A stretch of 64,000 nt of DNA from Saccostrea cucullata (taxonomy: Eukaryota). The first letter of the stretch is position 1. Each line of letters starts with the position of its first letter. The DNA is taken from the NCBI RefSeq assembly GCF_032062105.1, contig NW_026928590.1, forward strand, positions 124,001 to 188,000, written 5' to 3'. Of the stretch, positions 135-63,095 are shown in pieces. The notes under the pieces were generated by a model. The model did not search any database and was not told where the DNA came from. It was given only the letters and a program-made list of their open reading frames with translations. The position numbers and the translations under genes are program-made.

Positions 135-465
135 TTGCGAAGATTTCAACAAGATCAGCAACAACTACGATTATCAAAGATACCAATAACAAAAACAACA
201 ACATCAACAAAAAAGCCTTTTCCGCATAAATCCATTACTAGAATCAAAACAACAATTCCAAAAATACTTATATTGAAAACACCTTCCACAACAGAAGTAA
301 TGACCAGAAAACCAACTTTTCCAGATTCTACATCTTCTCGACCAACAAAGTCAAAAGAGATTGCGAATTATACATTAGCAACATGGTACATCTCACTGTC
401 AACACTGTTCCCAACGGCAGAGGTTGTCGGAACCTCGAAAACGAAACGTGTTGTTATAACTACTG
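135..465 (+). pseudogene. Cassette A mucin-like stalk exon (upstream exons outside the window), frameshifted
   Basis: acag acceptor and the ...ITTG|gtaag end shared with paralogs. In the phase-1 frame used by paralogs (VAKISTRS...) an indel near 165 leads to TAA at 227-229. Confidence 0.65.
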
Positions 466-1399
466 GTAAGAAGGAGAAGGAAGAATTAAAAGAATAATAT
501 AATATCACAGGGCATAAATCAAATTAATCAAATATATATTACGTCATTTTAATTAATGTCCTTGAGTCAGGGAAAAACATTTAGATCGGAGGTACCGGTA
601 TGTTGATTTCTCCCCCCCCCCCCAAAAAAAAGTAACATACATATCGATGGTATGAGACATTCTATGTACACATTTTTTGATTTACCTACATTCTAACAAG
701 TTTGTAAGTCAAAGAGAAAGAAGAATTTTAAATTTATCGATAAGCATTTGTTTAACAAAAAAATAATACAATTATAACCATGATATATTTATTTAATTTT
801 ATTGAATTAACTTTAATATGTTAATAATATGACATCTTTGAATGAGAAATAAACAATTTTTTTCCATTATCTAAATAATGAATTCTAAATTGTAATTTTA
901 GGAACTAAAATATGTACTGCATATCTTTACAATATTCATAACAGATCAAATTCGAAAGCACTTCAATACATGAATGCAAAGGTTTAAGTGAAACATAAAT
1001 AACGAACGGTGATCATTCTCAAAAGCAAATAATTCAAAGAATACAAATCAAGAGTATGGCAAACAGGAGCCTCTCAAAAGAGTGAAAATTGATCTCCTAA
1101 ACCCAGAAATCAAAATAAATCGTATAAATTTGAAGAAAAGAACCATGGAGCACCAGAGGAGGGATTGGGTGCCTAGGACTAGTCATACCTGCTTTGAACT
1201 TACAATGTTAGAACGCTAAATGTAATATTTCTAAAAAGTGTGCTGTAACATTTTGCTCTATTACATTCTGTGTTGATTGGAACGCAAAATGTAATAACGC
1301 GAAATGCAATAATCCAGGATTATTAAACTTTGTGTTGTTATTACATTTCGTAAAGCATGACACAAAGCCTACATAGGATCTAAATAAAACATACTGAGA

Positions 1400-1700
1400 T
1401 AATGAACAGCATTCAAGGTCAAAAGTAAATAAAACAATACAAAATAGGAGCAGAGCAAACATGGATGTCCAAAACTTCAGAGGTGGAATCAGATGCCATG
1501 AAGGAGTGAGCATTCCCTGCCGACCGATTACACCCGCCATGTGCTCCTTGTCATGATCGGGAAATAATGGAAAATCCGTCGTAAATTCAATGTGTAAATA
1601 ATGAGCTTACAAATAGTATGAAAAACGTCACTTGGCATTTGACTTAATGATAAATTGTGTTTTCTGAAAAGGTCATTGTATCGACCATAGAACTTTTGAA
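1400..1700 (-). repeat. High-copy Penelope-associated interspersed repeat (core GGTGTGACCGGTCAGCAGGGGATGCTCACTCCTCC...GGCACCTGATCCCACC)
   Basis: Related cores at ~8700, 13890, 17602, 19600, 21485, 25752, 31061, 33125, 49095, 51927 and 63415. Confidence 0.7.
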
Positions 1701-4440: not shown

Positions 4441-4715
4441 ATAAATCTATGTACATCCGCTCTTTAAAAAAAAAATCTATAACGACTCTTACATAGATTT
4501 ATTCCATCATTTCACAGCTATTGCAATACAATAATGAAATTGGACTTTTTCATCAGCATCAGAATCGCATCTTTTTCTAATAAATTACAGAAATAACATA
4601 AAGCAACTTCAATAATATGAATTGTATTAAAAAAAAAAGAAGAAATAGGGTTACTCTAGGCATTTTAATGGCATTATACAAATATGGTTAATAGTTAAGG
4701 ATCTTAATTTTCAAC

Positions 4716-4807
4716 CCATTTTTTATCTGAAATAACCGTTGAAGTTACAACATTCAGTGTTGTGCTTGATGAATTTGGTATTTCTTAATCTTCCATATGT
4801 TGTAAGT
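4716..4807 (-). pseudogene. Inverted, degenerate spacer exon of cassette A
   Basis: The reverse complement reads ...EIPNSSSTTLNVVTST..., homologous to 14749, 26910 and 28001; the acceptor AG is mutated to TG and there is an in-frame TAA. Confidence 0.7.
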
Positions 4808-10560: not shown

Positions 10561-13500
10561 ATGTTTACTGTCAAGTTATTTTATGTGTCAGTATTTGCTA
10601 CATATCGTTTCAGTAAGTATTAAAAGACTTTTGTATGTTTCTTGCGATTTTTCAAATTTCTTTTTGTATACGTAAATATACTGACACGCAAAAGAAACGC
10701 AACGCCCTACTTTAGGGTGAAATAATTATGTAAAGTAAAAAATTTTAAATCTTAAAATTATGGATATCTTCAAATTGTTAAATAACGGTAATTTAACGGT
10801 TGAACGATTTTCATACCTTAACCGGAAGTCAAGTATGAGTCTGCTTAACTGAAATCAAAAATTGCATGTTTAACAAAACATTTGGCAATATTATGGAGTT
10901 TTAAGGGTTTGTGCTGTTCATCTTAAGTAATGCAGCAATATTTCAAAAAATAAAATCTCCTTTCGTTTCTCGTAACGATGTTAAGGCTTCTTGAAAATGG
11001 CTTAAGTGCACATTTCCATTGCTCTAGCTGGAAAATCTCAAAGTAAAAGTGATGGAGAGTTGATGATGCAAAAATACACTACATTACGCCTCAATGGGGT
11101 CTTACATATTATATTCATAAATGATAGCTCTTGGACAGGATGTCCAAGGGTTGCTACAATGCGCTAAGTTAGAGAAAATTCAACCTATTCATCTGAAAAA
11201 CAGACAATTAAAAATGGAAAATAATAATTCCTTCGCTCAGATCTCGATATTGATAAACCAATTGTATCGTAGAAATTAAGCTTCTTATGTTGTGTAGGAC
11301 AGTCTTGCACGTTGTAATTGAATGGCTGGGAGGGGGTGTTTTAAAAGTCATATGTTACTTAGTAAAGTTAAAAGATAAACATTTAACATTTGTATAAAAT
11401 CTCTGATGTTCTAAAAAGTGAGTGTAGCCTTACTGTATTCTTTTTTTTTTAAATCATATATATACATGTATATAGCAAATTTCAATTAGATATATGTTCA
11501 AAATTTTAAATTTTATGTTATGTGTGATATCGCTTGAAGACTCAGTACATATCTGAGTTTGAGTTAAAACGCTTTATCCACGATTTTAGCGGCCAATCTC
11601 CGTATCCTCGATTCAACAAAATATTAATGCTCCAATCTTAACTAAACATTGGAATTATAGATTGAAGAATAAAAAATATATAATTTTGTATAAAAATTGG
11701 TATTTTCTTCGTAAACATTAATTTATACTTTGATCAATATATTTTTTTAGATACTTCTTTCGGAGTTCGCACTATATCAAAGAAAGTAAATCTGCCTTTA
11801 TCTGAGGAGATTACTATTACATCACCAGGATATCCATGGAAAAACTATGAAAGCAACACAACTTATATGTGGATAGTGACAGCACCTGACGTAACAGAGG
11901 AGATAAATATCAGTATAGAATTGGATATTCACCAAACTTCAGGATATGCATGTTATGACTACTTGAAGGTTTTTACAATAAACAATATATGTTAGGTCTA
12001 AATTATAACCTTTGAAATGAAAATCGATCCGACGTACTAGGTAATAATAACCGACAGGGTTTTTTGGATTGGTTTATGTTGGTTCTTTCATAATAAAAAT
12101 ACCTTAGTATTTTTATTTAGAGAAAATATACGTATATAAGTATTTATCTTACAATGTCTCATATTAAAGCTATAAAAATAATATAAATTAATATCTCTAA
12201 AGCGAAAAAAAATGTAAATTGTGTCCCAGTTGTAATGTAAAGTTGAAAAACGATTTTTACTAGATAGAGGAAATCACAAACAATAACTTCATGCTCTTTA
12301 AACAATGTGGGAGACGAACAACAAATAGAATAGCAAGAGGAAACAAACTAATGATCACTCTGTACTCGAATTTCGACATATTTACGGGTAAAGGTTTTCG
12401 GCTACGTCTTAAAGGTAAGTATCTTAATCATTCTTGTCAATTTCTCTGTATTTAATAAGCTTTTTTCCTATCTTATATTTTAATGAAAATACTTGGAAAA
12501 TCATTTTTAGGCACCATAATAACATAACCTAAATGTTATAATGCACGCACATTCTACAGATAATCTCATGTCAAGAATAAATGAAAAATTTGAACCAATT
12601 GTTTTCTATTTAAATATGATTTGAAAACATACTTACTAGTTGGATGTCATTTATTTTTTGTATATGTGTGACATAATATCTCCAGTTCTTTTGGCCCCCT
12701 ATCTGTAGATTTGTGTAAAAATTTATTTTAATATGTATCATTATTCATAATTATAATTTTGATTTGTTAAGCGGTCTCTGATTTGTAATTTTTTGTCAGT
12801 GATAAGAAATTAAGAAATTTAACTACTTAGTTCCCTTTAGCGTTATTTTTCTTTTCAAGTTTTGTTCATATTCTTTATTTAATAGCAGTCTCGAAGATTT
12901 CAAAAAGACCGACAACTTTAGCAACAACATTACGATTGTCAAAGATAATAACGACAGCTGCAGTGATAAAAACGTCATGGACAACATCATCTAAAACATT
13001 ATTTCCTCAAAACTCCAAAACCTGGAAAAAAACAATTCCAAAAAATTTTTCAACAAAATCCCCTTCAACAAAAGAAATTACAACAAGAAAACAAACAAAA
13101 ACAACTTTTGCAGAATCGACAGCTGCTCAACTAACAACATTAACAGAGATTACGACTGAAGTTTTGAGTTCTTCACTAGTAATATGGGACAGTTCAATGC
13201 TACCACTGCCTTCTACAATAGAGAATGTAGGAACCTCAAAAACGACAATTGATGATATAACAGGTAAGAAAGAGACGAAGAGGACATCAGTATAATAATA
13301 TTAACAACTAATTTTACAATCCTTATTTGATCAGATTAATAAAATATATACTAGGGCTCCTTTAAATTAATGCTTGTTTTCTGACTTTAAAAAATTGCAT
13401 CGGAGCTACAGGTAAGTGGGTTACTTTTCCTAAAAACATACATACCAAAGAAATGAGATATTTTTGGTGCAATTTTTTTAATAAAGCGACATTCGAAGAA

Positions 13501-14903
13501 GGCTGTTATTAAAATGATAAAAGGGTTTTAAATTTATCGATTTTGCTTAATTTCATTAAATTAACTTAAATACATGTATGTTTATAGTATGGTATGTTTT
13601 GATAAGACATAATAAACAATGGTTTTTTTCTTTGTCTTCTCAAGAACAAAATTATGAATTGCTAATCTTTTAAATCATCATAAAAGATCAAATTAAAAAA
13701 AAATTAATCTAAAAATGTGAAATCAAATTAATTGCAGATTGTTTAACGGCACTCTCGAGAAGTTTTCACGCATACGGTTTAAGGGCCCCTAAAACATTAG
13801 ATAAAGAAGTATGAAAGATGAATTTCATAAATCCGGTACACAAAACAGAAATCGTGAGAATTTGCAAAATCACGGACCGTTGGAAAAATCAGAGATGGGA
13901 TCAGGTGCTTTGGAGGAGTATTAAGCATCGCCTGTTAACCAGTTATTAACTATTTAACCAGTTAATTTAAATCGTCCTTACAGTGCGTTGCCCAATCAAG
14001 GAATGCCGCAAACGATTCAGACCCCTGTAAAATCCCCGGGGAATCACATATTCAAAGACCAATTAAAAGCGCGCATTCCGAGGTATGCAGAATGATGCAG
14101 AGTTAACTGCAGATAAAATTTACTCGCACTGAGTCATGTTTCATTTCCGGTAATAGATTACGCGTAAACTCTAGAGGCTTGAGTTGAATAACAATATGAC
14201 AAATACAAAATAAAATACTTATATCTAAACTTGTTGTCATAAACTATTTTATTTTCCCATAAAATTAATTATTAGACAAAATATGACTTAAGGATAGGCT
14301 GTATTCAAAAACAAGGTCGTAAAATCTTTCTTGGAATTTAAGAGAAGCTGAGTTTAAGGTATTACACAATATATAGATAATTTTTCTTTTTGTTATAAGA
14401 TACTTCTCTACTTATGCCTCTCCGTAATATGAAAAAAATATAACCGCTCGTTTTTGCCCCAAAATTCAAATTGATGAAAAAAAATTGGATTAGCGTATAT
14501 TTAACATTTTAATTTTATTGAACCCATGGCAAACGAGAATAAACTTTCCGAAAATCTTTAGAGCTATATATTGAGAAGACATTTTAGGTTTTACTTAATG
14601 CATGTACTACTTTATTTTAGGAAATTGTATAATTGAAAAACTCGATTTTATTTTTGGATAAGCAAAGCACTCGATATTTCCTTCATAGAGGGGAGTTTTC
14701 AAACATTTTATTTACAAAGGCGATAAACATTTTTGACTTGGCTTACAGACTCGCAACATATGATAGATTACGAAATAACAAATTCATCAAGCATAACACT
14801 GAATGCTGTAACATCAACAGAAACCACAACATTTATTTTCAGACTAGAAATGGGTTTGAAAATGAAATTCCTTAACTATTTTCCTATGTTTAAGAATAAA
14901 TAA
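10561..14903 (+). CDS. Cassette B: signal peptide - CUB - mucin stalk - spacer, no local TM exon; join(10561..10612,11751..11968,12264..12414,12889..13263,14749..14853), read-through stop at 14901-14903 if the last donor is unused
   Basis: Leader, CUB and spacer exons have the same sizes (52/218/151/105 nt) and phases as C, and all exons are open. Leader MFTVKLFYVSVFATYRF; ITSPGYPWKNYESNTTYMWIVTAP...CYDYLK / KQCGRR...YSNFDIFTGKGFRL. Tandem tagcag acceptor at 12883-12888. The 3' end is uncertain. Confidence 0.75.
10679..11300 (+). mobile_element. Tc1-like transposon relic in intron 1 of B
   Basis: Tc1-like end TA(C)ACTGACACGCAAAAGAAACGCAAC; degenerate DSSWTGCPRVATMR resembles the Tc1 GRPR motif. 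Confidence 0.45.
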
Positions 14904-17118: not shown

Positions 17119-17453
17119 ACAGCAATACATTACCAAAGGCATAAATGTCAGCTGCACAGAAAGAAAATCGACAAAGAATACAACAGAAAACCATTCTTTC
17201 ACAAACAAAAGCTAGACTTCGAGTAAAGTAAAAAAAAATTAACAAAAACATCTTCAACACTAGAATTTACAACAATAAAACAAAAATATCAGCCAATGTT
17301 AGGAATAAAGCTTCTCAACCAACAGCATCAAAAGAAATTTGAATGAAATTTTGCATTCAGCATGAACAACTTTGTACAGTTGATCGAAATTAATACCCTC
17401 AACAGCAACGATAAACAAAACATCAGAAACGGCACCTGTTACAATAACTACTG
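17119..17453 (+). pseudogene. Degenerate second mucin exon downstream of B
   Basis: Ends ...TSETAPVTITTG|gtaag like the functional stalk exons; contains stops and frameshifts and has lost its 5' acceptor. Confidence 0.6.
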
Positions 17454-20400
17454 GTAAGAAAGAAAGAGAGCGAGCATAAGTAAAACAAACTAATTGCACA
17501 ATCTTAATTGATCATTTCCTTAGATTATATATACGATGTATTCCTACACAACATGTTCTCTTCCATCCATTTCAACAATACGTGTACCATAGTGTTCACA
17601 ACAGGTGTGCACGGTCAACAGAGGGCGCTTTTACTCGTAGACGCCGGGTGCCACCTTCGAAATTTCTAGGATTTCGTGTTTATGTCCTTAAAAAGTTCAC
17701 AGATATGTTTGTTTGTGATTTATACTGCAATTTTTTTTAATAAAGTTCCATCGTATAACGAACCTTAGTTAACTCAACTTCGACGTATTTGAATAGATAT
17801 CAGGTAATTCAGGCTATAATTTTATTGCAGATTATAAAAAAATAATTCTGATTAAATTGAGGCATACGGGTGTAAAGATAATTTGGACAAAATATTCTTG
17901 GATGTATAAATCAAGTACATATACAACTGTACATGAACTCCTTATTTTCATAAATTTCAGAGCAATTTCAAAATGATCTTAATTTATAAGTGTAAAAGGA
18001 GAAGATGACAACATTGATCAATCTGATAAATCCAGTTAAAAATTCGAAACTTAAACAGGACAAAAACAGAGACCCCTAAAAACATCAGAGGTGGTTTCAG
18101 CTTTGTTTTTTGAAATGTTACCCAGAATAAACATCCATCCCTGATACAGATTGTTACGACAGCAATCTGTTTCATGGAAAAAAACATATAGATATATATT
18201 TTGCAATTTGCAGCACATTTGTGTAACTAAATTCTATTTTCGTTGCATTTTTTCCTTGTAAACAATGATATTTATGCTAAATCATGTACAATGATAAAAA
18301 TTACTGGATATTAAATTTTGTTAAGAATAAGCATAGTTTATTTTCCAAGCGGAAATACTCAAGCTTGGAAATGTTTCAAAATATTGAAGTTGCTCGCCTG
18401 GTCTAAGTATGGTTAAAATCCCACAGCAGACCGGTCCTCCTGTTAAGATCGTAAAAACTGGAATCCCATATCACAGTAGTAACCGACACACAAGATTCCT
18501 CGCTTCTCAGTGGTACTGAGTACCGACTTTAGGTGGAAATATGAAACCTTCAACCGCAGCAAGTAGTGACGTGTTACAATGCACTGAAAATTTACGCACT
18601 TTGAATTTGCGCTAACTTTGAGAACACTTTCAGACACTTAGAAAAATATGAAATGTCTTTTCTAAGAGCATAAATATCGATTTAAAAAAAAACGCACTAT
18701 GGAAAAAATTAGTATGGCCGAGTCATTTTTTTGCAGATGAGGTCACTTCGTGATCTGATATAGACCTCTTAAATATTTTAGGTTCTCTTAAATTTTATAA
18801 AAGTTTTTCTTGTCTGTTATGAGTTTGGTATATATAGGGGGCTATATGTGATCGGCTAAAAGCATCGAGTTCAATTTTGATTTTTCCATGCTATAAAAAT
18901 TATTTTACTGTCATTTGCTTTGTTGTACTTAAAATTTTCATCTTTTATAAGTTAATTCAAATCTATTAATGTTTTCAACGTCATACCAGTTATGATCATA
19001 CATAAATGTATGTAAAATATAGGCCTTGGAACTGAGGAGGCTAGGGTTGGCGGGGCCCCAACTTTTCTGCGAAGACATACATAATACAGACATTGAAAAT
19101 TAGGTGGGTTTTTTTTGGTATGAACTCCCTAACCCAATCCCTATTCAATTTGCTACCGACACCAATGCTGAGGAAAGATAAAGAGTTTGGCCGGGACGAC
19201 ACTCGATTCTTTCTGTCCTCGTTCTCAATGAGGATGAATCAATTCATACGTTTTACTACAGATATATTATACAAATATTGCTGTTTTTTGAGGTCAATGC
19301 AATGATTTAGCCATCTGAGGAGTACAATATTCACCGAGCCCGAAACAAATTTGTCTAAAAAGACGAAAATTTCTGATGTTAAAATCTATATAGGGAACTC
19401 ACATATACGTTGATGTTACAAAGATTTTAACAACCTCAATCATTTAAAGTCAGAATTTCCTATATTCTATGTTCGTACTAATATTTTTCAGCAAATACCA
19501 TTAACTGTTGGATAGTATTTTTTGCCTGACTCGTTTCATGATATAATTTTGTATTATATTTGACCACAAAATTGTTCCGATCCATCTATTTAAATAATCC
19601 GCCGGTCGGCAGGGGATGGTTACTCCTCCATAGCAGCTGACCCCACCTCTGATGTTTTAGATGTCCATGTTTGCTCTGCTTTAAAATTTGTTATATTTAA
19701 TGGACTTCTGAGCTTGAATTATGTTCTTTATCTGAATATACCTTTAAAAAGAATTATCATGTGTATTTTGTATTTCTATAATGCAAAGGCCGAAAAAGTT
19801 AATTTTAACTTTAAATAGTCTGCTGAGTGTGTAGTGAAGATTTGCATATGTTCATAATATGGAGAAGAAAGGGGATGGTTGAACCTAAATTTTTATACAA
19901 TTAAATTGATGCTCGCTGTTGTCAATGTATGATCAACTGAACCCCTGACTTTGTTTTTTATGAACAAACGAGATCCCATTGCATATTAATTTTATGAGGT
20001 TGACTGGGATGAGGTATAAGTCATATATCGTATGCTTTATTTGCCTTTAGTGGCCATCTTGGTTTTTTTAGTGATTATGAATGTAAGTGCTATTTGATCT
20101 ATTATGGGCTTTTCAGGATATAGTGAACAAAATAAATGGAATTCAATTTGGAACAAAGAAATTTATGATTGTGGCGATTTTACAAAGAAATATTCAAAAA
20201 CATAGGGAAAAAAATGCAATGAAATTGCATGATTGCAGAAATGAAATCACTACGAATGATTAGTCAGGACCATTGAAAGAGAGATTCTTTTATATGAAGA
20301 TTCAAACAATGATTTTTTCATAAAATTATGAAACCTTAATTAGCAGTAGGCATAATTGTAATGCAACGTAGAGCATAATTAGAAATGAAACATGTTTTAG

Positions 20401-22292: not shown

Positions 22293-25200
22293 ATGTATGC
22301 AGTGAATTTATATTTTGTGTCAGTAGTTACTGCATTTTGGTTCAGTAAGTATTAAAACACTCATAGATTCCCTTCGATTTTCTTTTGTGTTTTTTTTTAT
22401 ATAAATATTTACAATTATTACAATTATTGTACAATTATTAGTTTGTAATTCAATACAAAATTATTACCGTAATGCTCCGATCATTATATTATCAAATTAT
22501 AATTATGAGATCTTGACTGGACATTGGAATTATAAACTGAATAATTTAAAAGGTTGAGAATCCGCAAATACCTAAGATCCAGATTTTTTTAAAATGTTAT
22601 TTTACTTCGGAAACATAAAACTATTTACTTTGATCAGTTATATATAATTATGTTTTAGACATTTGTTTCGGTGTTAACACTACATTAAAGGAAATATATA
22701 TCCCTTTATCTGAGGAGATTAATATCACATCACCAGGATATCCATGGATTAACTATGAGAGGAACACAAATTATACATGGATAGTGACAGCACCTGACGT
22801 AACAGAGACGATTTATATCTCGATAAAAATGGATATTCACCATACTCCAGGATTCCCATGTGAAGACTACTTAAAGGTAGAGTATTGACTATTATATATT
22901 AGAAAGGTATAAATTTCTCAGAAAATAAACAAAATTCATGTTATTATACTTTACAAGGACTATCTTTCATTGGTTCGAAAACAAATAAGAAGATCCTACA
23001 TGATATTAAATAAAGAAATTGAAACAATCAAAATTTAAAATGAAGTAAATCATAACAAATTTAAATGTGCTATAGGGACGAATTAAGTGTTTTAATAGGT
23101 CAAGTATTAAAGATTTATAAATGTTATATACAGTGTACATAATATATGAAGAATGAACTACAGACATGCCAGATTATTCTTTGGCTTTAAAAAATTGAAA
23201 TATATGCTTGTTTTTTTTTTTTAGTATTTTTATGGTTTATGATGTTTTCTTTAAGTTTTTTATAGAAAAAATATACTAACAATTCTAATAAGATATTATA
23301 TGTATCAACACATTTAATTAGATACAGAAAATCACGTGCATTTACTTCGGGTGCTTTCACCAATCCTTTTATTTCTTCTGTTTGTATATATTCTTCTTAG
23401 AATTATATCTACATGTATATACCATATTTAAACCAGTTTCACTAGATTTAGGAAATCAATGACATATTTCTACAAGTTCGTTTTTATAACAAACAAATTT
23501 TAATAGATTCAAGAAATCAAAGACTACAACTTCACAATCTTTAAGCAATGTACAAATCGAACAGAATACAGAATAGCAAAAGGAAACAAATTGATGATCG
23601 TTTTTCACTCCAACAATGATGAATTTACAAATAAAGGCTTTCGACTTAGTCTTAAAGGTAAGTTTTTTTAATAAAGATATGTCAAATTCTAGATATTTAC
23701 AAGAATTTACATAATACATATTATCCGATAATAATTGAATTTACTTTTAACACGTCATTTGTTTGGATAAAAGATTTTATCCATTTTGTATAACATAACT
23801 TGCCTACGTCACAATGAGTTACCGAATTTACATAATACATATTATCCGATAATAATTGAATTTACTTTTAACACGTCATTTGTTTGGATAAAAGATTTTA
23901 TCCATTTTGTATAACATATATAACTTGCCTACGTCACAATGAGTTACCGTAACGTCAAAAAACGTTTTACTCCGCTTGACGTTACTTTTAAAATTTAATC
24001 AATGTGAAGTCTTATTCTGGGGAAAAAATTGTCTCACTGTCTGCACTGAAATTAAATTTTAAAAAATGAATCATATTTCAACTCATATTATACGATATAA
24101 CAAAATTTGGGCAGTTTACGCTTTTTTATAAACCGCTTCGCGGTGTATAAAGCGTTAACTGTCCCAAGTTATGTTATATCGTATAATATAAGTTGACATA
24201 AACTTCATTCCTTACGAAATTATTGCAAAATGTCAATTACTCTGTTTTACTTAAGTATTGAAAATGTCAAAAAGTACACAATACATAAGCAAATTTTTTT
24301 CTCATATTAATTTATTTCTGAATTTTTTATACTTTGTTATATGATTCAAAATCTCTTCTTATATAATACAGTGGACCCTCATTTATCCGGACGCTTTGGT
24401 TCCCAATAAATTTTTCCGGATATGTGAAGCATCCGGATATCTGAATCTGGATACCAGCTAAACAAGAAAAAATATCATTTAAAAATTTCGCTCCGATGAA
24501 AAATCGTCCGGATACTGAAGCATCCGGATATCTGGCGTCCGGATATCTGAAGGTCCACTGTATATATGAAAAAAATTCAATTATGAGATTCAACTTGAGC
24601 ATGAGCCTTACTTCTAAAATGTAAACATCCAAATGACTTACAAAGATCAATCATTATTGACAATGTAATGATGTTACACTTTTCAAGAAATGAGTTAAAA
24701 TACAATACATTGTTGATTTGCACTACAATAATATTCAATTTCTCAACATATGAAGTCTTACCAACCTGCATGATTTAATCTGCATTTTTAAATGTAGACA
24801 TTCCATTTTTTAATCCTGTTATATACCTGAGAAAAACTTCTTTTTTTCTAACAGTATTGAAATATTTAAGAAGATCAACAATAGAGACAGTTTTTGCGTC
24901 AACAACAACTCCTTTTTCAAAAACATCAATGACACCGGGGACAAAAACGACAAAGTCATCAACAAAAGCATTATTTCCTCATCAAATCCCCACTACAATT
25001 AAAACAATTTCAAAAATTACAACAAAAAAATCAATAACTTCAACGACTCAATCAACAACAGCAAAAGAGAAATTAACAAAAGTCAAAAGAAAAACAACAG
25101 AAACAACTCTCCCATATCTGACAGCTACTCGTCCAAAAACATCAACAGAGATTACGACTCAAGTTCTGAGTTCTACACCAAAAGCATGGTACAGCTCATT

Positions 25201-50972: not shown

Positions 50973-51069
50973 ACTTAAAACATATGATAAATTTCAGAAA
51001 TACCAAATTCCGCAATCATAGCGCTGAATGCTGTAACGTCAACACCGTTTATTTTCAGACTAGAGATGG
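50973..51069 (+). pseudogene. Cassette D spacer exon, frameshifted
   Basis: Homologous to the 105-nt spacer exons but 97 nt long (1-nt insertion plus 9-nt deletion). Confidence 0.65.
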
Positions 51070-51427
51070 GTTTGAAAATTAAAATCAATTTTTACTAACC
51101 ATGTTTTATAATGCAAATAAAATGCCGATATTAACCTTTTCTTCAGTTTTGTGTTATTTTTAATATTTAAAAAATAAGGTATCATTTTAAAACATCTATC
51201 AAGATTTAAATACGGGTTTGTCACGAGATTAAATTCATAAAGCCAGAAGGGCTTTATGATGTATTTGATCTCGTACCAACCCGTATTTATAGACCGATAG
51301 ATGTTTTAATATGACATTGAAAACATTGAAATCAATCATTATATTATGTCTTTTAATATAATGGAAGCTGTTGTCAATGTAAGATGTGATTGTCGACAAG
51401 GAAACTGGAGGAAAGTACGACAACGTG

Positions 51428-51771
51428 AACAACAATACATTAACAAAGATATCAATGTCAGCTGCGGAGAAAAAACGGCAAAGAAAACAATAGAAAACCA
51501 TTTTTTCAAAAACAAAAGCTTGAAATTTAAGCAAAGTAAAGGAAATCTTTCAAACAAAACATCTTTAATAAAAGAATTAACGACAATAAACAAAAATACC
51601 AACAAATTTTCAGAGTAATACGTACAGCTGCTCAACCAACAGCATCAAAAGAAATTTTGAATGAAATGCTGAGTTCTGCACGAACAACTTTGCACAGTTG
51701 ACCGCAATTAATACCCTCAACAGCGGCGATAGAGGGAACCTCAGAAACAGGACCTGTTACAATAACTACTG
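51428..51771 (+). pseudogene. Degenerate second mucin exon downstream of D
   Basis: Homologous to 17119-17453; ends GTSETGPVTITTG|gtaag. Confidence 0.6.

Positions 51772-51774
<3 letters not shown>

Positions 51775-51804
<30 letters not shown>
51775..51804. repeat. (AG)n microsatellite
   Basis: Directly visible; it expanded just after the relic donor. Confidence 0.9.
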
Positions 51805-51805
<1 letters not shown>

Positions 51806-55415: not shown

Positions 55416-55423
55416 TATAAATA
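55416..55423 (+). promoter_or_regulatory. TATA box of cassette E
   Basis: TATAAATA 106 nt upstream of the ATG. Confidence 0.5.
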
Positions 55424-55521
55424 GATTCTGATCATACATTTTATTGATATTTCAAGTTGTGATTTGTACATTTTAAAAGAGACTAGATAAATAATTATTC
55501 AAAATCCTATTAGAAGAAAAC

Positions 55522-58500
55522 ATGTACGCTGAAAATTTATTTCATAAGTCAGTAGTCTTTACATTTTGGTTCAGTAAGTATCAAAATACTTATGTATTTT
55601 TCATACGATTTTTCAATTTTATATTTTTTTTTAAATAAAAGCATCAATTTGGATGAGGTATAATTATTAGTTTGCATTTCAATGCAAAATTATTATATTC
55701 TTATTCTACAAATGTTGATTGGACGTTAGAATTATAGACTGCCTAATTTAAAAAAATGATAATCCGAGTTTGCAAATAGTCTTCAGAATTATTTGTGCTA
55801 AAACATTTTTTACTGAAAGATCAAATCATGCATTTTGATCAGTTTTATATAATTATGATTTTAGACACGTGTTTCGGTGTTCACATCATATCCAAGGAAA
55901 TAAATCTCCCTTTATCTGAGGAGATAATGATAGAATCTCCGGGATATCCATGGAGAAACTATGAAAGGAACACAACTTATAAGTGGATAGTGACAGCACC
56001 TGAATTAACAGAGGAAATAAATATCAGGATAGAAATGGATGTTCACGAAGCACTAGGATTCCCGTGTTATGACTATTTAAAGGTTTAAGTATTGCCTATA
56101 ATATACAGGAAGGTATATATTACAAATAATGAAGAAATACGTGTAAAGTATATACTTGGCCCAATATTTCTAAAAGGTTCAGAACTTAATAACTCTGTGT
56201 TGCAAAGAACTAACGTCGTTATGACGAATTCAAAATTTGCTAGTACGTATTTAACTGGTTTTAACTGGTTTTAATTCTAAAACTTCTTATAACGAATTGA
56301 ATTCGTTTAAACTAGTTCTTTAATTTGTTATATAACGAATTAAATTCGTTAAAACGAATTCGACAAATCGTTATATGGAATTCATATATAGGCCCTGATT
56401 GTTGAATTTGTATAAACGATTTTTATTCGTTGAATTAGAAATTTGTGATAACAAATTTAAGAAATTGTTATATTGATTTCAATCTGTTATAACAAATATT
56501 AGAATTTGTTACAACGAATTCAACAGATTTGTTATGACAGATTAAAATCGTTATAACGAATTCAAAGAAATTGTTATAACGAATTAAATTCGTTTTTTTT
56601 TTTTATAAATTCGACAATTCGTGATATCAAATTTGAAATATTTTTTCATAGGTCCTAAATGGGCTTCCGTAATATTTGGGGGAAAATGAACCAGAGGTAA
56701 AATAAGAATAATCATTGACTTTAAGGATATACGATCCTCAGCCAGGAAGGATAACTCCTAAATTTATAATTTAATTCAAAAAGTCTTGAAATAAAGCTTG
56801 AAATTGAAATTTTTTCATGCAGCAATTTTCATTTTATGCCTCTACGTATGATTCAATGCTCTTTAAAGTTTTAACAAACGGTATAAAAAAATTGACTTTT
56901 GTACCTCATAACATTAAATAAAACTTGCATATTTTAAAGAAATCAAATTTCTTTTAATTTAGCCTTAGTTACCAATGTTTATAAGCATGATTTGAAATTA
57001 AAAGTGATTTACGGTGTTTTCTTTGAAAGGAAACACTTCCTACACAATGCATTATGAAACGATGGAAGTAAGAAGGAGAAAGTAAAGTACTAAATAAGTG
57101 TAAAATTCATGCAATTTTCTTTAAAAGCCTGGATACCTATGATTTTTATTCCTAAAATGTATTTCTTGATCAATTATCAATTAAAAAATATGCAGTAGGT
57201 AGTTCAAATCGCATTTCCTGAAAAAAATATTTGAGATTTACTAATTTTCCCTATATAATATGATTAAATTTAAAGATGAAGTTTAGAGAAACACCGTGGG
57301 TAAATACATTTTAATTTGAGAATTTAGAGACGTTTTTGTGAGCATTTTTAATTACTTAATGCCTGATTTTCGGAACCTGAGGATCGGATAACCTTAAGGC
57401 AAACAAATATATATTTGCATTTTTTTTAATTATTATTTTTTTTTTGGGGGGGGGGGGGGGTCCCTAAATTTTTCTCTTATGTTTATATTTAAAATTAAAG
57501 AGATAAACAAATTAAATAGATACAGGAAATAAGTGGCGACAACTTCACACTCTTTACAAAATGTGGGAAACAAACAACAAGTAGAATAGCATTTGGGAAG
57601 AAACTAATGATATCACTCTACTCCAACGATGTCGTACTTACAGCTAAAGGTTTCCGACTAAGCCTCGAAGGTAAGTTTTTTAAATGTTGTAAACTTCTAT
57701 ATATTTAATAGGACTGCATCTCAATCTGACATCTTTTAGAAAATATTATTACCTAATCAAGTGAATTTTGTTGTTTTATTAGAGATTTAATATTTTCATC
57801 TATTCTGGATGTGTTTTCAGTTTTCCTTATCTTATCAAACCGATCTATTGACCGGTCAAAAGAATGCGCGTTCTATTGACCGGTCGGTCAATAGAATGCG
57901 CGTTCTATTGACCGGTGACGTATTTCGTCAAAAACGATCCGGGTTTCGAATTTAGTTGTTTGTAACACTGCACAGACATGATAAACAATCATCTTATTCG
58001 ATCTTTCTGCATTGGCTTTAAAAATTGTGTGATTTCAATGGTCGGATAATTTAAATGAGAGTTACTTTTAATTAATACACTGTGGGGTGTGGAGACTGGT
58101 CCTTCGGGTGAGATCTATCAACCGAGGTCCCGTGTAGCAGTAGGTGCTCTGCTGGCACGAAAAAGGTCCCTCTCCACCGGGAAGTGGTGGCGTCTCCATA
58201 AGAGTGAAAAATTTTCGACAGGAATGTAAACAATAGTCTATACAATCAATCTTTAATTAATATTACAGATGCACCATATCTAGGTAAAAATTATCAATAT
58301 GGTATGGGAACCTTATGTACTGAATATACAATTGTGAACACTTAATACGGAAAATAAAATTAGGTAATAAAACAATTATTTAATGCCTGAACAGTCAATA
58401 GACCAGAAAATTTTTCCCTCGGTGCAGGGAACAGCTCAGTGTGTTCTATTGCCCTCGGCTCTGGCCTCTGGCAATAGAACACACTGAGTTGTTCCCTGTA

Positions 58501-61500
58501 CCTCGGGAAAAATATTCTGGTCTATTGACTGCTCAGGCATTAAATAATTGTATATTGCTGCATGCCTTTTAAATATCAAAATCACTACCAATACATATCT
58601 TATTTAACAGATGATTCATTTTCTTATTTTAAAAGTAACATACTAAAAGTATTAACGTTTAAAACAGAATCAAATATTAATAAGAGAAAAAAAAACTGAA
58701 AATGTAAATTCATGACATGAAAGATACTTTTTAAAGAAAATTTAGCAAAATAATTGTTGTCGTAGTCTGATCATGAACATCAGAATGATTACATAAAGAT
58801 CAAATTGTCATTTTTAGAGCAATTTAAATCCGTAGAATATGGAAAGAAGGAGTATTCTTATTTTAGTATATTTTTGACTAGTCATATAAGCTGTAAAACA
58901 GAAACAATTGATTCTGCAGTCAGATTGGCTTTTTAATGCTCCATGACAAGTCATTCATACTTTTTTTCAGACTATTCAGCTTGTACAATGGTAACTAGTT
59001 TCAAATAATGTTGGAGTGTTTAAAATTTTAAAAAACGTGTCTTTAGTGTGCAATTTGTTAATATCTGATCTCTTTACAATTTTACATTGGGTTTTGTGTT
59101 TCCATTGCTTTTAATTATTCTTATATAACATGAAAAGCAATCCGTGAAATTTTATTTTTCACAGTATTAAAGATTTCAACGAGATCAACAATTAAGAAAA
59201 CTGTGGCGGCAACTACGTATACATCACCAATGTCGAGGATATTAACATCTGTAGAGACTAAAACAACAACAACAACACCATTGAAAACTATAAGTACGCA
59301 GCTAATAATGCCACAAACGTGTGAATTTTTTAACAAATATAGATACGTGTTATCAACCACATGTTTAAGTATGATTCACACAACGTACACTGTACCTTAA
59401 ACGTGTGGTTGGATTGCACGTAAATGTGTTTCATATGCTTCAAGTACGTTTTGCATAAACAATATGTTACCTACGTTAATGAACAGCATTGGGTAACGCG
59501 TGCGTTACATATAACAAACACACATTACAAGCATGTTGTAAAACGTATGATATATGGTATGGAATAATCGTATACATTACACGTATGTGAATAAAAAGAA
59601 ATGTGTTCTAACAACCACACTTTTCATAATGGCTTATATGTGTAAAAAGGTGTGTTTGTGAAGTATATTTCTTATGTTAATGGTACTTAAACATATATTT
59701 ACAATAAATGTAGGCAAACCCTAATTGAATGTAATGGCCTGTTTACCAAATACCTCCTCCCCAAGGAAAAAAAACACATTAACTATAATGTTTATAGTGT
59801 ATAATTAAGGTCTTCCGTCTTCACGGAAGACCTTATAGTGATTCTATTGTTTCTTATTATTATTCTTATTTTTTTGACTTTCTAATTTTGTGCACGCGAT
59901 TTCTCAAAGACTACTGCCTGAAATTACATGAAATTTTCAGAACTAATGTGCTGTAACATGAATTTATTATATCCGAGAGATTTTTTGGAAAGTCACTCCC
60001 GGTGCCAAGTTATGGACAATTTCCTGAAATTAAAATGACATTTTGTCCACGATATAACTTTAAAACGGTAAGAGATATCAAAGTGAAACTTTCAGGGATT
60101 ATAGATCGTGATAGATGCTAGCCAGGACGCAACCTTTCGTTCGTCGTCAATACTTCCCGTCGTTGGGATATGCAAATTGAAAAAAACGTATTTTCTAACT
60201 TTTTTGTTTTCCAATATTTTTCATTCATTTTGGGAATATTAATAGTGACTCTTCTATAGATGCTTACTATATAATTTGTTTGAACATTGGTTAATCTGAA
60301 CTTTAGATATTTATATTTGAAAATCTGAAGCGGGCCCAAGATGGCGGCTGTCTCTGTCAAGTCCGCCATTTCGCGAGTAGGGGCTTATGGAGTCAGTTGA
60401 GCGTTTGACTAAATGATACATGGAAAGTAAAAAAACTACGTGGACTTTCACCTATTAGTACGCTGCAATTCAGTGACAATCTTAAAACTTAAATTCCGTT
60501 TACTGCTTTAGTGTAATTGGGCTAGATACGTGTGTGCAATGTGTCTTTACTTTCTTAACGTCGAAATAAAATAAAGGCGATAAGAAGTTGTTTGATTTAA
60601 TATTTAATTTCATTGAAGCTATCACACCAATTTGATAGATCAGTCCAAAGGATAGGCAGGAATATTTACTCGTGGTGTTTGTTGCCAGATCATGAATAGT
60701 GGCCCGCCTTTTTATGATTCTTAGACAGGTGTACTGTTGCAGGCGTACTGTATACATAACTATATTTAGAGCAGTATTTAAAGTTTATTCGTTTTTCACA
60801 AAAGTTACCACTGTGTTTCCCGTGCACACTTGAGTCATATTAAAGTAATACAAAAGACAGAAATAAGAAAACCTTTTTTAAATAAGATCGTCTAATGGAG
60901 TTTATATTAACATTCTTTTCTCAAAGATATTTAAAGTTGAACATTGAACATAAATGAAATCTGATTCCTTGACCGTCGAAGGGCGAGACATGTTTTTCAT
61001 CGAACCATTTCTACCTTTTCATGAAGGTGTAAAGAATCGGGTTAGTTCACTTTGGGGATAAACGGATAATTAAGAAAAATTAAAAATGATTACCATTTCA
61101 CTTCTTTTGTGTTGCTTACCTATATAAGATATAGAATATGTACAATCTGTTAAAAATATTTTCTAAACCTCAAAATTTAGGCTTAAAGAACGTTTTTTTT
61201 CTTTATTCTATTGAAGCTATCACATCTATTTAATGAAACATTCAAAAGAAAAGGCGCGCAGATTAACTTGTGGCGTTTGGCGCGAAATTATAAATTTCTG
61301 TCTGAGTGTTTCCATCATAGCAGCTGTTTAGTTTTTAAGACACTCAATTTTCTATGTTTACTGCCCAAAAAGTTTGCCCTCTCTCGATAAGAAACATTCC
61401 AAAGAAAAGGCGCGCAGATTAACTTGTGGCGTTTGGCGCAAAATAATAAAGAGTGGCGTGCTTTTCGTGATTCTTAGACAGGTGTATTGTTGAAGAAGTA

Positions 61501-63095
61501 TATTCAAGTACATTTGGAGCAGTGGACTCAAACGCGTGATGTGAGCGTGTTGGGAATAAAGAGGAAAAAAGCGCGTCGGATTTTCACGTTGTCGACCTGG
61601 GTTCAATTTTTTATCACTTTTTCAGCTCGATTTTAGGTTCTTTTCCTGAAACGGACGGAAGACCTCTCGTTGCTCGCAACGAGATCGTTTCTAGTTACCT
61701 TTATGCTTTTACTGATTCAGGCGATTTAGGTTTTTTTTTTTTGTTTTTTTTTTTTTGTTTTTTTTTTTTTTGTTTTTTTTTTGTTTTTGCTGGAGGGCAG
61801 TTATCAAGCCAATTGCTTGTTGCATGTGCATTCACCTTAATAAAAGGTATCAAAATTGTAATAAAAAATGCATGTGTAATATGGTACCACTGAAAGGCAA
61901 AAGCATCAATCCTTCTTAGGATACCCTCAACTAAAAGTATGCTGATTATTTCTTTAATTTCTTTTTTAACTCCGACATCGGAGAAAATCTAATTGATTTT
62001 CCTCGAAGCTATAACTGTCTTGGAAAAACTATTGTATATAAAGACAAAATATTATCAACTTTCGTAAAATTTGACATTTTCTGCTTTCATGTTGGCATGC
62101 TTTTTACATTTCCGAAATAGTGAGTAACAACCATAAATTGACTGGATGCTAAAAATGGACTTCCAATAAAGTAACCAATCAGAATTGTTAACTTATTTGT
62201 ACATTATAATTTTTGTTCACTCGCATTGACGATCGGCGGGAAATTTGAAAATGAATCAATAAAGGGGATTTTTACTTTTATTTGAGCTTTGTTAAAACTG
62301 CATTCGTCACTTCCGTAAAATTTTATTCATTGGACATCATCTTCCATTTCACCCATGTTTTCAATATGTGAATTAATGTTAAAAACATATTTTTTTAACA
62401 AGGCATTGTTTTACATAGGTACGTGAAGGTATAGGAAACATACATTTTGATCACATGAACAGTGTATTTCATGAACAAATCACATGCATACATTTCGCGA
62501 AACAAATTAACATCATACGGAAATCACATGAATAAAAAAAATGTTTAACGGGTGTGCATGTAATATAATTATGTTAGTCAACACGTATGTTAAAATGTAT
62601 GAGTCACGCATGACATTAATTCATCTGTGTTAAAACGTATCTTTAACATACATGGTAATTAAATTATGTTTAATGTACTTGTGCATACGCTTGACGTATG
62701 TGACACGTAAGTGGCACATTTTGCTGTGTACATGCTGTTCATTTTAACAACAGAATCGAAGATTTCAACAAGATCAACAAAAACTATGACTTTGGCATCA
62801 ACTACGACTCCATTATCAAATATATTAACGACACTGGATTTATTTACTCATAAAACCAAACCTGGAATTAAAACAACAATTCCAAAAAGAATTTCAACAA
62901 AATCACCAATATCAACAACAGTTACAGGAAAAACAAAAATGTCAACAAAATTTCCGAATTTGATAGCCAGTCAACAAACAACATCAAAAGAGATTATGAG
63001 TGAAGTTTTGAATTCTGCTAAAGCAACATTGCCACAACTGCCTTCAACAGAGATTTCTAGATCCTCAAAAAAGACACGTGTTGTTATAACTACTG
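55522..63095 (+). CDS. Cassette E (3' incomplete): leader - CUB - mucin stalk; join(55522..55573,55865..56082,57520..57670,[59165..59293],62754..63095)
   Basis: Exon sizes 52/218/151, open frames, GT-AG sites. Leader MYAENLFHKSVVFTFWF; IESPGYPWRNYERNTTYKWIVTAP...CYDYLK / TKCGKQ...YSNDVVLTAKGFRL. A partial duplicate of the mucin exon lies at 59165-59293. Confidence 0.75.
56270..56640. repeat. Degenerate short tandem repeats (TTCGTTATAACGAATT-like) inside a probable MITE
   Basis: Repeated palindromic AATTCGTTATAACGAATT units. Confidence 0.6.
56725..57393. mobile_element. Kolobok-like MITE, TTAA TSD
   Basis: TTAA|GGATATACGATCCTCAG ... CTGAGGATCGGATAACC|TTAA. Confidence 0.75.
58372..58551. repeat. 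180-bp near-perfect palindrome, part of a non-autonomous element (~57740-58551)
   Basis: ACAATTATTTAATGCCTGA...GTGTTCTATTGCC / GGCAATAGAACAC...TCAGGCATTAAATAATTGT. Confidence 0.8.
59297..62728. mobile_element. Non-autonomous TIR element (CAC-type termini, TA TSD) filling the intron between the two mucin exons of E
   Basis: The left end GTA|CGCAGCTAATAATGCCACAAACGTGTGA matches the reverse complement of the right end GTA|CACAGCAAAATGTGCCACTTACGTGTCA at 23 of 31 positions; CACGTG-rich subterminal regions. Confidence 0.6.
59805..61696 (+). mobile_element. Helentron-type element (AAGGTCTTCCG family) nested in the TIR element
   Basis: Same termini as 40599-41562. Confidence 0.75.

What the first reader, a model, noticed from the sequence alone, without database searches (positions are those of the whole stretch)
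135..63095. Tandem family of CUB-mucin-TM(Glu)-ITAM-like receptors: candidate invertebrate immunoreceptor cluster
Seen in the sequence: five paralogous cassettes with conserved exon sizes and phases; one complete type I receptor (single CUB on a long O-glycosylation-type stalk, charged TM, paired YxxI/L tail); TM-less siblings; a spare TM+tail module; and pseudogenised copies. Established knowledge: tandem birth-and-death arrays that mix signalling and soluble or decoy members, with ITAM/ITIM tails and charged TM residues, typify vertebrate paired receptor clusters (KIR, LILR, CD300, TREM). Those use Ig or lectin ectodomains rather than a lone CUB. Inference: this is an analogous CUB-based recognition system in a bivalve. 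I do not recognise a named family with this architecture.
Basis: partly seen in the sequence, partly recalled or inferred. Interest (0 to 1): 0.85.

Follow-up and report, generated by a model that had tools for sequence, protein, structure and literature searches.

The report
Oyster CUB-mucin tyrosine-tail receptor cluster
This stretch of the hooded oyster genome holds a tandem, partly decayed cluster of an unnamed oyster-only family of cell-surface proteins (one CUB head on a mucin stalk, a membrane helix with a buried glutamate, and a tail with invariant tyrosines); it looks like a signalling receptor, but an immune role is not shown.

Summary
The window (Saccostrea cucullata, contig C10727:124001-188000) carries five paralogous cassettes on the + strand with conserved exon sizes (52/218/151 nt) and phases.

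- **Gene C** is complete: 7 exons, 451 codons, no internal stop.
- **Gene E** is also complete, but its stalk, TM and tail exons lie 2.3-3.3 kb past the window end.
- **Cassette B** is open but has no TM or tail of its own.
- **Cassettes A and D** are broken.
- **The spare TM+tail module** is a degenerate 3' remnant.

The head is a true CUB domain by Pfam (on a paralog), by a PDB profile search and by fold. Across Saccostrea, Ostrea and Crassostrea the mid-membrane Glu is kept in all but one member seen. Four tail tyrosines are invariant.

Spliced transcripts exist. Two predicted junctions of C are seen in contigs of a public run. A full-length C. gigas homolog sits in a gill RNA-seq contig.

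The ITAM-compatible 9-residue spacer is Saccostrea-specific; it is 13-19 residues elsewhere. All intact members share one tail type and an acidic TM, so there is no paired activating/inhibitory logic. TM-less copies are mostly decaying duplicates, not a decoy class. Immune function is untested. Related clusters of this genome were already noted by this scan.

The parts
135..465 (+). Cassette A, mucin exon. The rest of A lies upstream of the window and is broken, so A is a pseudogene.
   Evidence: ORF and invariant G|GTAAG donor. Stops in A's exon 1 and CUB-b just upstream of the window.
10561..10612 (+). Cassette B, exon 1 (ATG plus signal peptide, 52 nt, phase 1 donor CA|GTAAGT)
11751..12414 (+). 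Cassette B, CUB-a (11751-11968) and CUB-b (12264-12414) exons
   Evidence: 68-76% identical to the CUB of P0051. Splice sites and phases.
12886..13263 (+). Cassette B, mucin exon (phase 1-1)
14749..14853 (+). Cassette B, small stalk exon. B ends here at a phase-1 donor; no TM or tail follows before gene C.
   Evidence: B reads 301 codons open.
17339..17464 (+). Broken mucin-exon copy with two stops
22293..22344 (+). Gene C, exon 1 (signal peptide)
22659..23657 (+). Gene C, CUB-a (22659-22876) and CUB-b (23507-23657) exons
24855..25262 (+). Gene C, mucin exon (135 aa, 41% Ser+Thr)
26889..27014 (+). Gene C, stalk exon. Its donor is seen joined to the TM exon in run X1.
   Evidence: Joint 27013/27014 -> 28394/28395, GT..AG.
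27994..28104 (+). Second copy of the stalk exon in gene C. The observed joint skips it.
28395..28479 (+). Gene C, TM exon with Glu in the middle of the helix
   Evidence: Joint 28479 -> 28628, GT..AG.
28628..28943 (+). Gene C, tail exon with NVYATIP, NPYKDL, GVYDTT and a fourth Tyr
36877..37798 (+). Orphan type-2 3' module: stalk exon (~36877-36975), TM exon (37245-37329, Gly->Arg in the helix) and tail exon (37531-37798, YKDF, frame lost after YDTTS). It has no signal or CUB exons and is probably a pseudogene remnant.
   Evidence: Equals XP_062616399.1.
43281..43322 (+). Cassette D, exon 1 with a 10-nt deletion (42 nt, phase 0). It is out of frame with the phase-1 CUB-a exon.
   Evidence: 14 stops if spliced as in B, C and E
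44272..46544 (+). Cassette D, CUB-a (44272-44489), CUB-b (45266-45416) and mucin (46194-46544) exons. Each is open in its native frame.
50930..51782 (+). Cassette D leftovers: frameshifted stalk exon (~50930-51085) and a mucin-exon copy with a stop (51624-51782)
55522..55573 (+). Gene E, exon 1 (signal peptide)
55865..57670 (+). Gene E, CUB-a (55865-56082) and CUB-b (57520-57670) exons
   Evidence: (CUB E=0.025 on the half domain)
59113..59277 (+). Partial mucin-exon copy inside E's long intron
62754..63095 (+). Gene E, mucin exon. E's stalk, TM and tail exons follow beyond the window, at window-equivalent 66295-67276.

Best explanation
**What it is.** The window is part of a large tandem birth-and-death cluster of an oyster-restricted, unnamed gene family. 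It spans at least 270 kb on this contig, with more copies on other contigs.

**The protein.** Each functional gene encodes a type I membrane glycoprotein with five parts:
- a short signal peptide;
- one CUB domain, split over two exons;
- a Ser/Thr-rich mucin stalk with a small juxtamembrane stalk exon;
- a TM helix with a glutamate in mid-membrane;
- a disordered tail of about 105 residues with four invariant tyrosines.

**What the window holds.** There are two functional genes: C, and E, whose last three exons lie past the window end. There is also one open but TM-less cassette (B), two broken cassettes (A, D) and a degenerate orphan 3' module. B-C and D-E are copies of one duplicated two-cassette unit.

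**Likely mechanism (inferred).** The CUB head, held away from the membrane by the glycosylated stalk, binds an extracellular ligand. The TM glutamate drives self-association or pairing with a partner helix. The tail tyrosines are phosphorylated, presumably by Src-type kinases, and dock SH2 or PTB proteins. This makes it a phosphotyrosine-signalling surface receptor. Ligand, partner and physiological role are unknown.
For: **Gene structure.** AG/GT sites, phases and open frames were checked.

**Family size.** The genome holds at least 13 intact tail exons and at least 21 close CUB-a exons, usually two CUB cassettes per tail. The stretch 17-23.7 kb is colinear with 51.3-57.7 kb.

**CUB head.**
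- The same-species paralog P0051 scores 25 bits on Pfam CUB against a cut-off of 21.4. Relatives score 39-60 bits.
- The head profile hits cubilin at 2e-41 and the neuropilin-2 a1 domain at 71 bits.
- The AF2 model has pLDDT 82. Its top Foldseek hits are all CUB domains, with TM-score 0.65-0.77.

**Public models and transcripts.**
- P0051 maps to a proximal cassette plus stalk, TM and tail exons. That is the same plan as gene C.
- Run X1 holds GT..AG joints at exactly the predicted stalk->TM and TM->tail junctions of C.
- Intron-free full-length ORFs sit in Logan contigs. One comes from C. gigas gill RNA-seq.

**Conservation.**
- Four tyrosines are invariant or nearly so, along with D49 and R55, across 12 tails at 26-67% identity.
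- The TM Glu is present in all members seen except P0017.
- dN/dS is 0.26 for the tail, 0.51 for CUB-a and about 0.3 for CUB-b, so the genes are under purifying selection.
- The tail matches no Pfam family and folds to nothing. That fits a tail carrying short linear motifs.
Against: - No binding, phosphorylation or localisation data exist for any member.
- The X1 contigs are only 90-95% like gene C and do not cover C's mucin exon. They may come from a paralog or another strain, so expression of C itself is not shown.
- On the window's own exons, Pfam CUB stays below threshold when searched exon by exon. CUB membership for C rests on 60-76% identity to P0051.
- The whole 105-residue tail is conserved, not just the tyrosines. 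It may do something other than SH2 docking.
- YxxI and YxxL motifs also serve as endocytic sorting signals.
Confidence: 0.6

Rival explanations
1. The family is an invertebrate immunoreceptor system analogous to KIR, LILR, CD300 and TREM. The tail is an ITAM that recruits Syk, the charged TM pairs with adaptors, and TM-less members act as soluble decoys.
For: - Gene C and all Saccostrea paralogs carry D-x-x-YxxI, a 9-residue spacer, then YxxL. This fits the broad pattern D/ExxYxxL/I-x6-12-YxxL/I used for the oyster receptor CgIgR.
- CgIgR was reported to bind CgSyk (PMC6994640).
- The family has expanded in tandem with gene birth and death.
- A homolog is transcribed in C. gigas gill.
Against: - The spacer is 13 residues in O. 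edulis, 13-14 in C. gigas and related transcripts, and 16-19 in the deeper branch. The second motif reads YTEV, YAEV, YMDA or YVEY there.
- The strictly conserved pair is the second and third tyrosine (Yxx-hydrophobic, four residues, then YD), which is not an ITAM.
- Tail motifs and the TM charge sit on the same chain in every member. That is unlike paired receptors.
- The charge is acidic, as in the adaptors DAP12 and CD3, not basic as in activating receptors (my own knowledge).
- TM-less cassettes are mostly broken.
- Gene-wide dN/dS of the head stays below 1.
- There are no expression data from hemocytes or after pathogen challenge.
Confidence: 0.2
2. The proteins are endocytic or scavenger receptors, or membrane-tethered mucins of epithelia for barrier or adhesion. 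The tyrosine motifs act as AP-2 type YxxPhi sorting signals rather than as phosphotyrosine docking sites.
For: - The first tyrosine motif ends in Ile in nearly all tails, and the second usually ends in a hydrophobic residue.
- The stalk is long and Ser/Thr-rich.
- A transcript is present in gill.
- The best PDB sequence match of the head is cubilin, an endocytic CUB receptor.
Against: - The third tyrosine (YD-T/K/R-x) and the fourth are invariant but do not fit YxxPhi.
- A conserved mid-membrane Glu is not explained by sorting.
- The similarity to cubilin is generic to CUB domains.
Confidence: 0.2
3. The cassettes are not all separate genes. All junctions are phase 1, so a transcript starting at B could splice B's mucin or stalk exon in frame to C's CUB-a exon or to C's TM exon. 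That would give isoforms with two CUB-mucin modules, or with an alternative head on a shared TM and tail.
For: - Exon 1, mucin and stalk exons all end in phase 1. CUB-a, stalk and TM exons all begin in phase 1.
- B keeps its own start codon, open exons and splice donors.
- O. edulis public models P0029 and P0030 contain two CUB-mucin modules in tandem.
- Upstream sequence plus exon 1 is conserved between cassettes.
Against: - Six of 8 distal cassettes in the genome are defective, so a second head is not required.
- B against its nearest relative has dN/dS of about 0.9 on few sites.
- The public model P0051 and the transcript contigs have a single CUB.
- The two-CUB models are automatic predictions, and no joint of this kind was seen. 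The single read-laying run could not span B to C.
Confidence: 0.12

Closest known systems
CDCP1 (CUB domain-containing protein 1, vertebrates)
   Same: A type I membrane glycoprotein with a CUB-type ectodomain and a tail whose tyrosines are phosphorylated by Src-family kinases and dock effectors (abstract of PMC4395315).
   Different: CDCP1 has several CUB-like domains and no mucin stalk. As far as I know it has no conserved acidic TM residue. The oyster tail matches no Pfam family, and no tail homology to CDCP1 was seen. The oyster family is a tandem multigene family.
Neuropilins, NETO and cubilin (CUB-domain receptors and co-receptors)
   Same: The head is a bona fide CUB domain. Its best solved relatives are cubilin CUB5-8, the neuropilin a1 domain, MASP, PCPE-1 and TSG-6.
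   Different: Those proteins combine several CUB domains with other domains and lack tyrosine-motif tails of this kind. The oyster head lacks the first CUB disulfide: there is no Cys before the SPGYP motif in some copies, and Tyr replaces Cys before the conserved Trp. Conservation of the Ca2+ site was not tested.
ITAM receptors and adaptors (Ig-alpha/beta, DAP12, FcR-gamma; oyster CgIgR)
   Same: The Saccostrea tails fit the broad ITAM pattern with a 9-residue spacer. The TM helix carries an acidic residue, as in the adaptors (my own knowledge). An ITAM-Syk route has been reported in oysters (PMC6994640).
   Different: The spacer is not conserved, running from 9 to 19 residues. Two further invariant tyrosines lie outside the pattern. 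The ligand-binding head, the TM charge and the motifs sit on one chain. The ectodomain is CUB, not Ig or lectin.
Paired receptor clusters (KIR, LILR, CD300, TREM)
   Same: Tandem birth-and-death evolution, with intact genes, fragments and pseudogenes side by side.
   Different: There is no split into activating members (basic TM, short tail) and inhibitory members (ITIM tail). The two tail subtypes carry the same tyrosines.

Membership tests
CUB domain (Pfam PF00431) | Match to the Pfam CUB profile above the gathering score | tested here: met
   Met on the same-species paralog P0051, at 25 bits against a cut-off of 21.4 over profile positions 10-109 of 110. Relatives score 39-60 bits. On the window's own exons, searched one by one as required, only E's CUB-a half gives E=0.025, over positions 9-61. 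C, B, D and E are 54-80% identical to P0051 over both CUB exons.
CUB domain (Pfam PF00431) | Beta-sandwich CUB fold | tested here: met
   The AF2 model of the P0051 head has pLDDT 82 with eight strands. The top Foldseek PDB hits are all CUB domains: TSG-6, neuropilin a1, PCPE-1, MASP and C1r, with TM-score 0.65-0.77. The head profile against PDB sequences hits cubilin at 2e-41.
CUB domain (Pfam PF00431) | Two conserved disulfides | tested here: inconclusive
   The second pair is kept: the Cys of the C-x-D-Y-L motif is present in most members and the Cys of the K-x-C-G motif is invariant. The first pair is missing: Tyr stands before the conserved Trp, and the N-terminal Cys is present only in some copies. 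Known CUB domains that lack the first disulfide exist (my own knowledge).
ITAM | YxxL/I, a 6-8 residue spacer (6-12 in the broad form), then YxxL/I | tested here: inconclusive
   Met in the broad form, with a 9-residue spacer, by gene C and all Saccostrea type 1 and type 2 tails. Not met by homologs: the spacer is 13-14 residues in O. edulis and C. gigas and 16-19 in the deeper branch. The second motif is sometimes YMDA or YVEY.
ITAM | The doubly phosphorylated motif binds the tandem SH2 domains of a Syk-family kinase | not testable with these tools
An oyster precedent exists only for CgIgR.
ITIM | [S/I/V/L]-x-Y-x-x-[I/V/L] | tested here: not met
   The residue two positions before the tyrosine is Asn or Asp at the first tyrosine, varies at the second (Asn in gene C's NPYKDL, Asp, Glu, Gly or Thr in other members) and is Gly, His or Asn at the third. 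The third motif ends in Thr, Ala, Met or Ser.
Paired activating/inhibitory receptor cluster | Related ectodomains on two tail classes: a basic TM residue with a short tail, versus an uncharged TM with an ITIM tail | tested here: not met
   All intact tails carry the same tyrosines. Every TM helix seen in this genome has the acidic Glu, and only the O. edulis homolog P0017 lacks it.
Protocadherin/UGT1-type variable-constant locus | Many intact variable first exons, each spliced to shared constant exons | tested here: not met
   Cassettes have four or five exons with internal acceptors. Six of 8 distal cassettes are defective. No B-to-C joint could be looked for.

The most novel reading that the evidence does not exclude
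Oysters evolved their own class of surface receptors, convergently with vertebrate immunoreceptors. A variable CUB head sits on a mucin stalk. A conserved mid-membrane glutamate assembles the chains or recruits a partner. A multi-tyrosine tail signals through Syk or another SH2 kinase in gill or hemocyte defence or in self/non-self recognition. The Saccostrea branch has tightened the spacer to ITAM length.
Probability: 0.15. Interest if true: 0.75.

Novelty: new variant of a known kind. Interest (0 to 1): 0.5.

Why it matters
Bivalves rely on expanded, lineage-specific receptor families, and very few of them have a known signalling route. This family is compact and easy to test. It has one small ligand-binding domain, one conserved charged TM residue and four invariant tyrosines. 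It is present in commercially important oysters (Crassostrea, Ostrea, Saccostrea).

If the tail signals, it would add a CUB-headed receptor class to the few invertebrate phosphotyrosine receptors known. It would also give a handle on how oysters sense ligands at gill surfaces.

The locus also shows that automatic annotation struggles here. One public gene model joins exons 100 kb apart. Copy counts taken from annotation will therefore be unreliable.

Tried and rejected
- **Pfam, exon by exon.** On the window this gave only one sub-threshold CUB hit. I therefore used public full-length paralogs as proxies.
- **Spliced model.** Exons were joined only inside local scripts, to count codons and stops.
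- **Word-index protein searches.** The three searches returned few hits and no window-encoded full-length protein, probably because mucin words swamp the index.
- **Exact look-up of the orphan module's protein.** It found no contig.
- **RNA evidence.**
  - Only one run held any words of gene C, a share of 0.05.
  - Laying it gave two splice joints but no cover of C's mucin exon.
  - Expression of C itself remains open.
- **Positive selection on the head.** Pairwise dN/dS stays below 1. Site-level tests were not run.
- **Protocadherin-style and decoy readings.** Both were rejected, because distal cassettes are mostly broken.
- **Other ORFs in the window.** None matched a Pfam family.
- **The tail.** It has no Pfam match and no predicted fold.
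- **Papers.** Searches found no paper on this family.
- **Ca2+-site residues of the CUB head.** I looked at them only by eye in the HMM alignment and make no claim.
Full report
**1. Where we are**

The window is G000:C10727:124001-188000 (+) of a 1.17-Gb assembly. Exact matches to RefSeq proteins name the species as Saccostrea cucullata, the hooded oyster. The window is AT-rich and has no N. Apart from interspersed and tandem repeats, it holds nothing recognisable except the family described here.

**2.

Self-comparison and six-frame reading show a cassette repeated on the + strand. Each cassette has five exon types:
- a 52-nt first exon, with ATG, a hydrophobic signal and an invariant CA|GTAAGT donor;
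- a 218-nt exon, CUB-a;
- a 151-nt exon, CUB-b;
- a Ser/Thr-rich exon of 340-410 nt with an invariant G|GTAAG donor;
- a small stalk exon.

Phases run 0-1, 1-0, 0-1, 1-1 and 1-1.

Gene C adds a TM exon (28395-28479) and a tail exon (28628-28943). All seven exons are flanked by AG/GT. Together they read 451 codons with no internal stop. The TM helix has a Glu at its centre. The tail carries D-N-V-YATI, nine residues, then YKDL, four residues, then YDTT, and a fourth Tyr further on.

**3. Corrections to the inventory**

- *Gene E* is not TM-less. Its stalk, TM and tail exons lie at window-equivalent 66295-67276, just past the window end.
- *Cassette A*, of which only the mucin exon is inside the window, has stop codons in exon 1 and in CUB-b. 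Its CUB-a is diverged.
- *Cassette D* has a 10-nt deletion in exon 1. This makes the exon 42 nt long and phase 0. Spliced like its siblings, D reads 14 stops. Its stalk exon is frameshifted too.
- *Cassette B* is open through five exons (301 codons). It ends at a phase-1 donor with no TM or tail before gene C.
- *The spare module* (36877-37798) is a 3' end of the second tail subtype.
  - It has Gly->Arg in the helix and YKDF instead of YKDL.
  - It loses the family frame after YDTTS.
  - It is annotated publicly as a 125-aa product with no signal or ectodomain.
  - I read it as a remnant.
- *Broken mucin-exon copies* lie at 17339-17464 and 51624-51782, and a partial copy at 59113-59277.

**4. 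Larger pattern**

The genome holds at least 13 intact tail exons and at least 21 close CUB-a exons. They sit on C10727, C8743, C22314 and smaller contigs. Along each contig there are usually two CUB cassettes before each TM/tail.

The B-C interval (17-23.7 kb) is colinear with the D-E interval (51.3-57.7 kb). The repeated unit is therefore 'distal cassette + proximal cassette + TM/tail'.

Of the eight distal cassettes seen, six are defective:
- stops in CUB-a at C10727:67.9k, C8743:125.0k and C22314:47.3k;
- a split CUB-a at C8743:215k;
- cassettes A and D.

None of the nine proximal cassettes has a defect in CUB-a. By my own arithmetic, Fisher's exact p is 28/12376, or 0.002.

The public model P0051 (LOC134272224) uses only the proximal cassette plus stalk, TM and tail exons. 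So the functional gene is the single-CUB gene next to the tail, and the distal cassettes are decaying duplicates.

**5. What the protein is**

Exon by exon, Pfam gives only a sub-threshold CUB hit on half a domain.

A profile of nine tail exons was searched against 1.84 billion representatives. It found 25 proteins. Every named hit is from an oyster, and the unnamed ones come from Logan assemblies of sequencing runs. The full-length members share one plan: signal, one CUB, mucin stalk, TM with Glu, and the same tail.

Evidence that the head is a CUB domain:
- CUB is above Pfam's cut-off in all full-length members tested.
- The head profile hits cubilin, neuropilin, MASP, PCPE-1 and TSG-6 CUB domains in the PDB.
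- An AF2 model of the P0051 head (pLDDT 82) has only CUB domains among its top Foldseek matches.
- The window's B, C, D and E heads are 54-80% identical to P0051.

The tail has no Pfam match and no predicted structure.

**6. Transcription**

Only one public run held words of gene C. Its contigs show GT..AG joints 27013/4 -> 28394/5 and 28479 -> 28628. These are exactly the predicted stalk->TM and TM->tail junctions. The first joint skips the second stalk-exon copy.

The contigs are only 90-95% like C and leave C's mucin exon uncovered. They may come from a paralog or another strain. They prove splicing of the family, not of C itself.

Two Logan contigs carry uninterrupted full-length ORFs of homologs. 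One is from SRR27190619, a C. gigas gill RNA-seq run of a Vibrio alginolyticus experiment (PMC11171025).

**7. Tests of the interpretation**

*(a) Tyrosines.* Twelve tails at 26-67% identity were aligned.
- Three tyrosines, the Asp after the third and an Arg are invariant.
- The Ile of the first motif and a fourth Tyr are nearly invariant.

*(b) ITAM.* The 9-residue spacer fits the broad pattern used for the oyster receptor CgIgR (PMC6994640), but only in Saccostrea.
- The spacer is 13 residues in O. edulis.
- It is 13-14 in C. gigas and related transcripts.
- It is 16-19 in the deeper branch.
- The second motif varies there: YTEV, YAEV, YMDA, YVEY.

The fixed element is the second-to-third tyrosine distance, which is not an ITAM.

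*(c) Paired-receptor logic.* Every intact member combines the acidic TM residue with the same tail. There is no basic-TM/short-tail class and no ITIM class.

*(d) Decoys.* The TM-less copies are mostly broken (section 4). B against its nearest relative has dN/dS near 0.9, on few sites.

*(e) Selection.*

| Part | Median pairwise dN/dS |
|---|---|
| CUB-a | 0.51 |
| CUB-b | about 0.3 |
| Tail | 0.26 |

The head changes about three times faster at the protein level than the tail: dN is 0.17 against 0.06. There is no gene-wide sign of positive selection.

**8. Most likely mechanism**

Shown:
- the domain plan;
- the splicing of the 3' exons;
- conservation of the Glu and the tyrosines;
- purifying selection.

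Inferred:
- The CUB head binds a ligand at the tip of a glycosylated stalk.
- The mid-membrane Glu mediates self-association or pairing with another helix.
- The disordered tail is a phosphotyrosine docking platform.

Rivals:
- Sorting-signal use of the YxxPhi motifs, which would make this an endocytic receptor or tethered mucin.
- Multi-cassette isoforms. The all-phase-1 junctions allow these, and two O. edulis models hint at them.

**9. Comparison and novelty**

The closest known kinds are CUB-domain single-pass receptors with phosphotyrosine tails (CDCP1) and ITAM-bearing chains with an acidic TM residue. It is a member of the CUB superfamily only through its head. The tail and the overall plan match no named family.

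Public names are automatic, and no paper was found.

This scan had already noted related CUB-mucin-tyrosine-tail clusters on other DNA of the same genome, and this same cluster in the neighbouring window.

I rate it a new variant of a known kind, with moderate interest.

Noticed in passing
window 37531-37798 and G000:C10727:61383-61502: The public gene model LOC134278088 isoform X1 (P0036) joins a stalk exon at contig 61.4 kb (100% match) to the orphan tail exon in this window (100% match). The two lie about 100 kb apart, with several family genes between them. Both ends belong to degenerate type-2 remnants, so the model looks like an annotation artefact.
   Followed up: partly
L001/L002 (tail exons at C10727:152626 and 95866): The tails of gene C and of the gene 57 kb upstream differ by a few amino acids but by no synonymous change (dS 0, dN 0.017). 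Their CUB-a exons have dS 0.35. This suggests recent gene conversion or a mosaic duplication of the 3' end.
   Followed up: partly
window 29747-31801 and 32572-34314: A segment of about 2 kb is duplicated at 92-94% identity between gene C and the orphan module. Inside it lies a 166-nt tandem repeat (30154-30579).
   Followed up: no
window 41855-42420: A tandem array with a period of about 149 nt, 3.4 copies at about 80% identity. It sits in the most GC-rich part of the window (GC 0.35-0.37 against about 0.31 elsewhere).
   Followed up: no
window 1381-1695, 25739-25899, 30972-31130, 33035-33192, 63272-63567: A short interspersed repeat of 160-300 nt occurs in both orientations at 71-78% identity. 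It is likely a SINE- or MITE-like element.
   Followed up: no
window 1919-5087 versus 17117-14477: A long inverted repeat at 70-86% identity flanks cassette B. Parts of it recur at 50838-51150. One arm overlaps B's small stalk exon, and reverse-strand copies of that exon lie at about 4693-4808.
   Followed up: no
window 24350-24549 and 25750-25949: Run X1 covers these intronic stretches of gene C at very high depth (summed depth 40,000-75,000). They are probably abundant transposable-element transcripts or DNA, not the gene.
   Followed up: no
L018 (G000:C4369:47223-47441, minus strand) and further contigs: A more distant subfamily has extra cysteines in the head, a 16-19 residue spacer between the first two tyrosines, and YD-K/E tails. 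It forms its own clusters on C4369, C2275, C16018, C10468 and C3213.
   Followed up: partly
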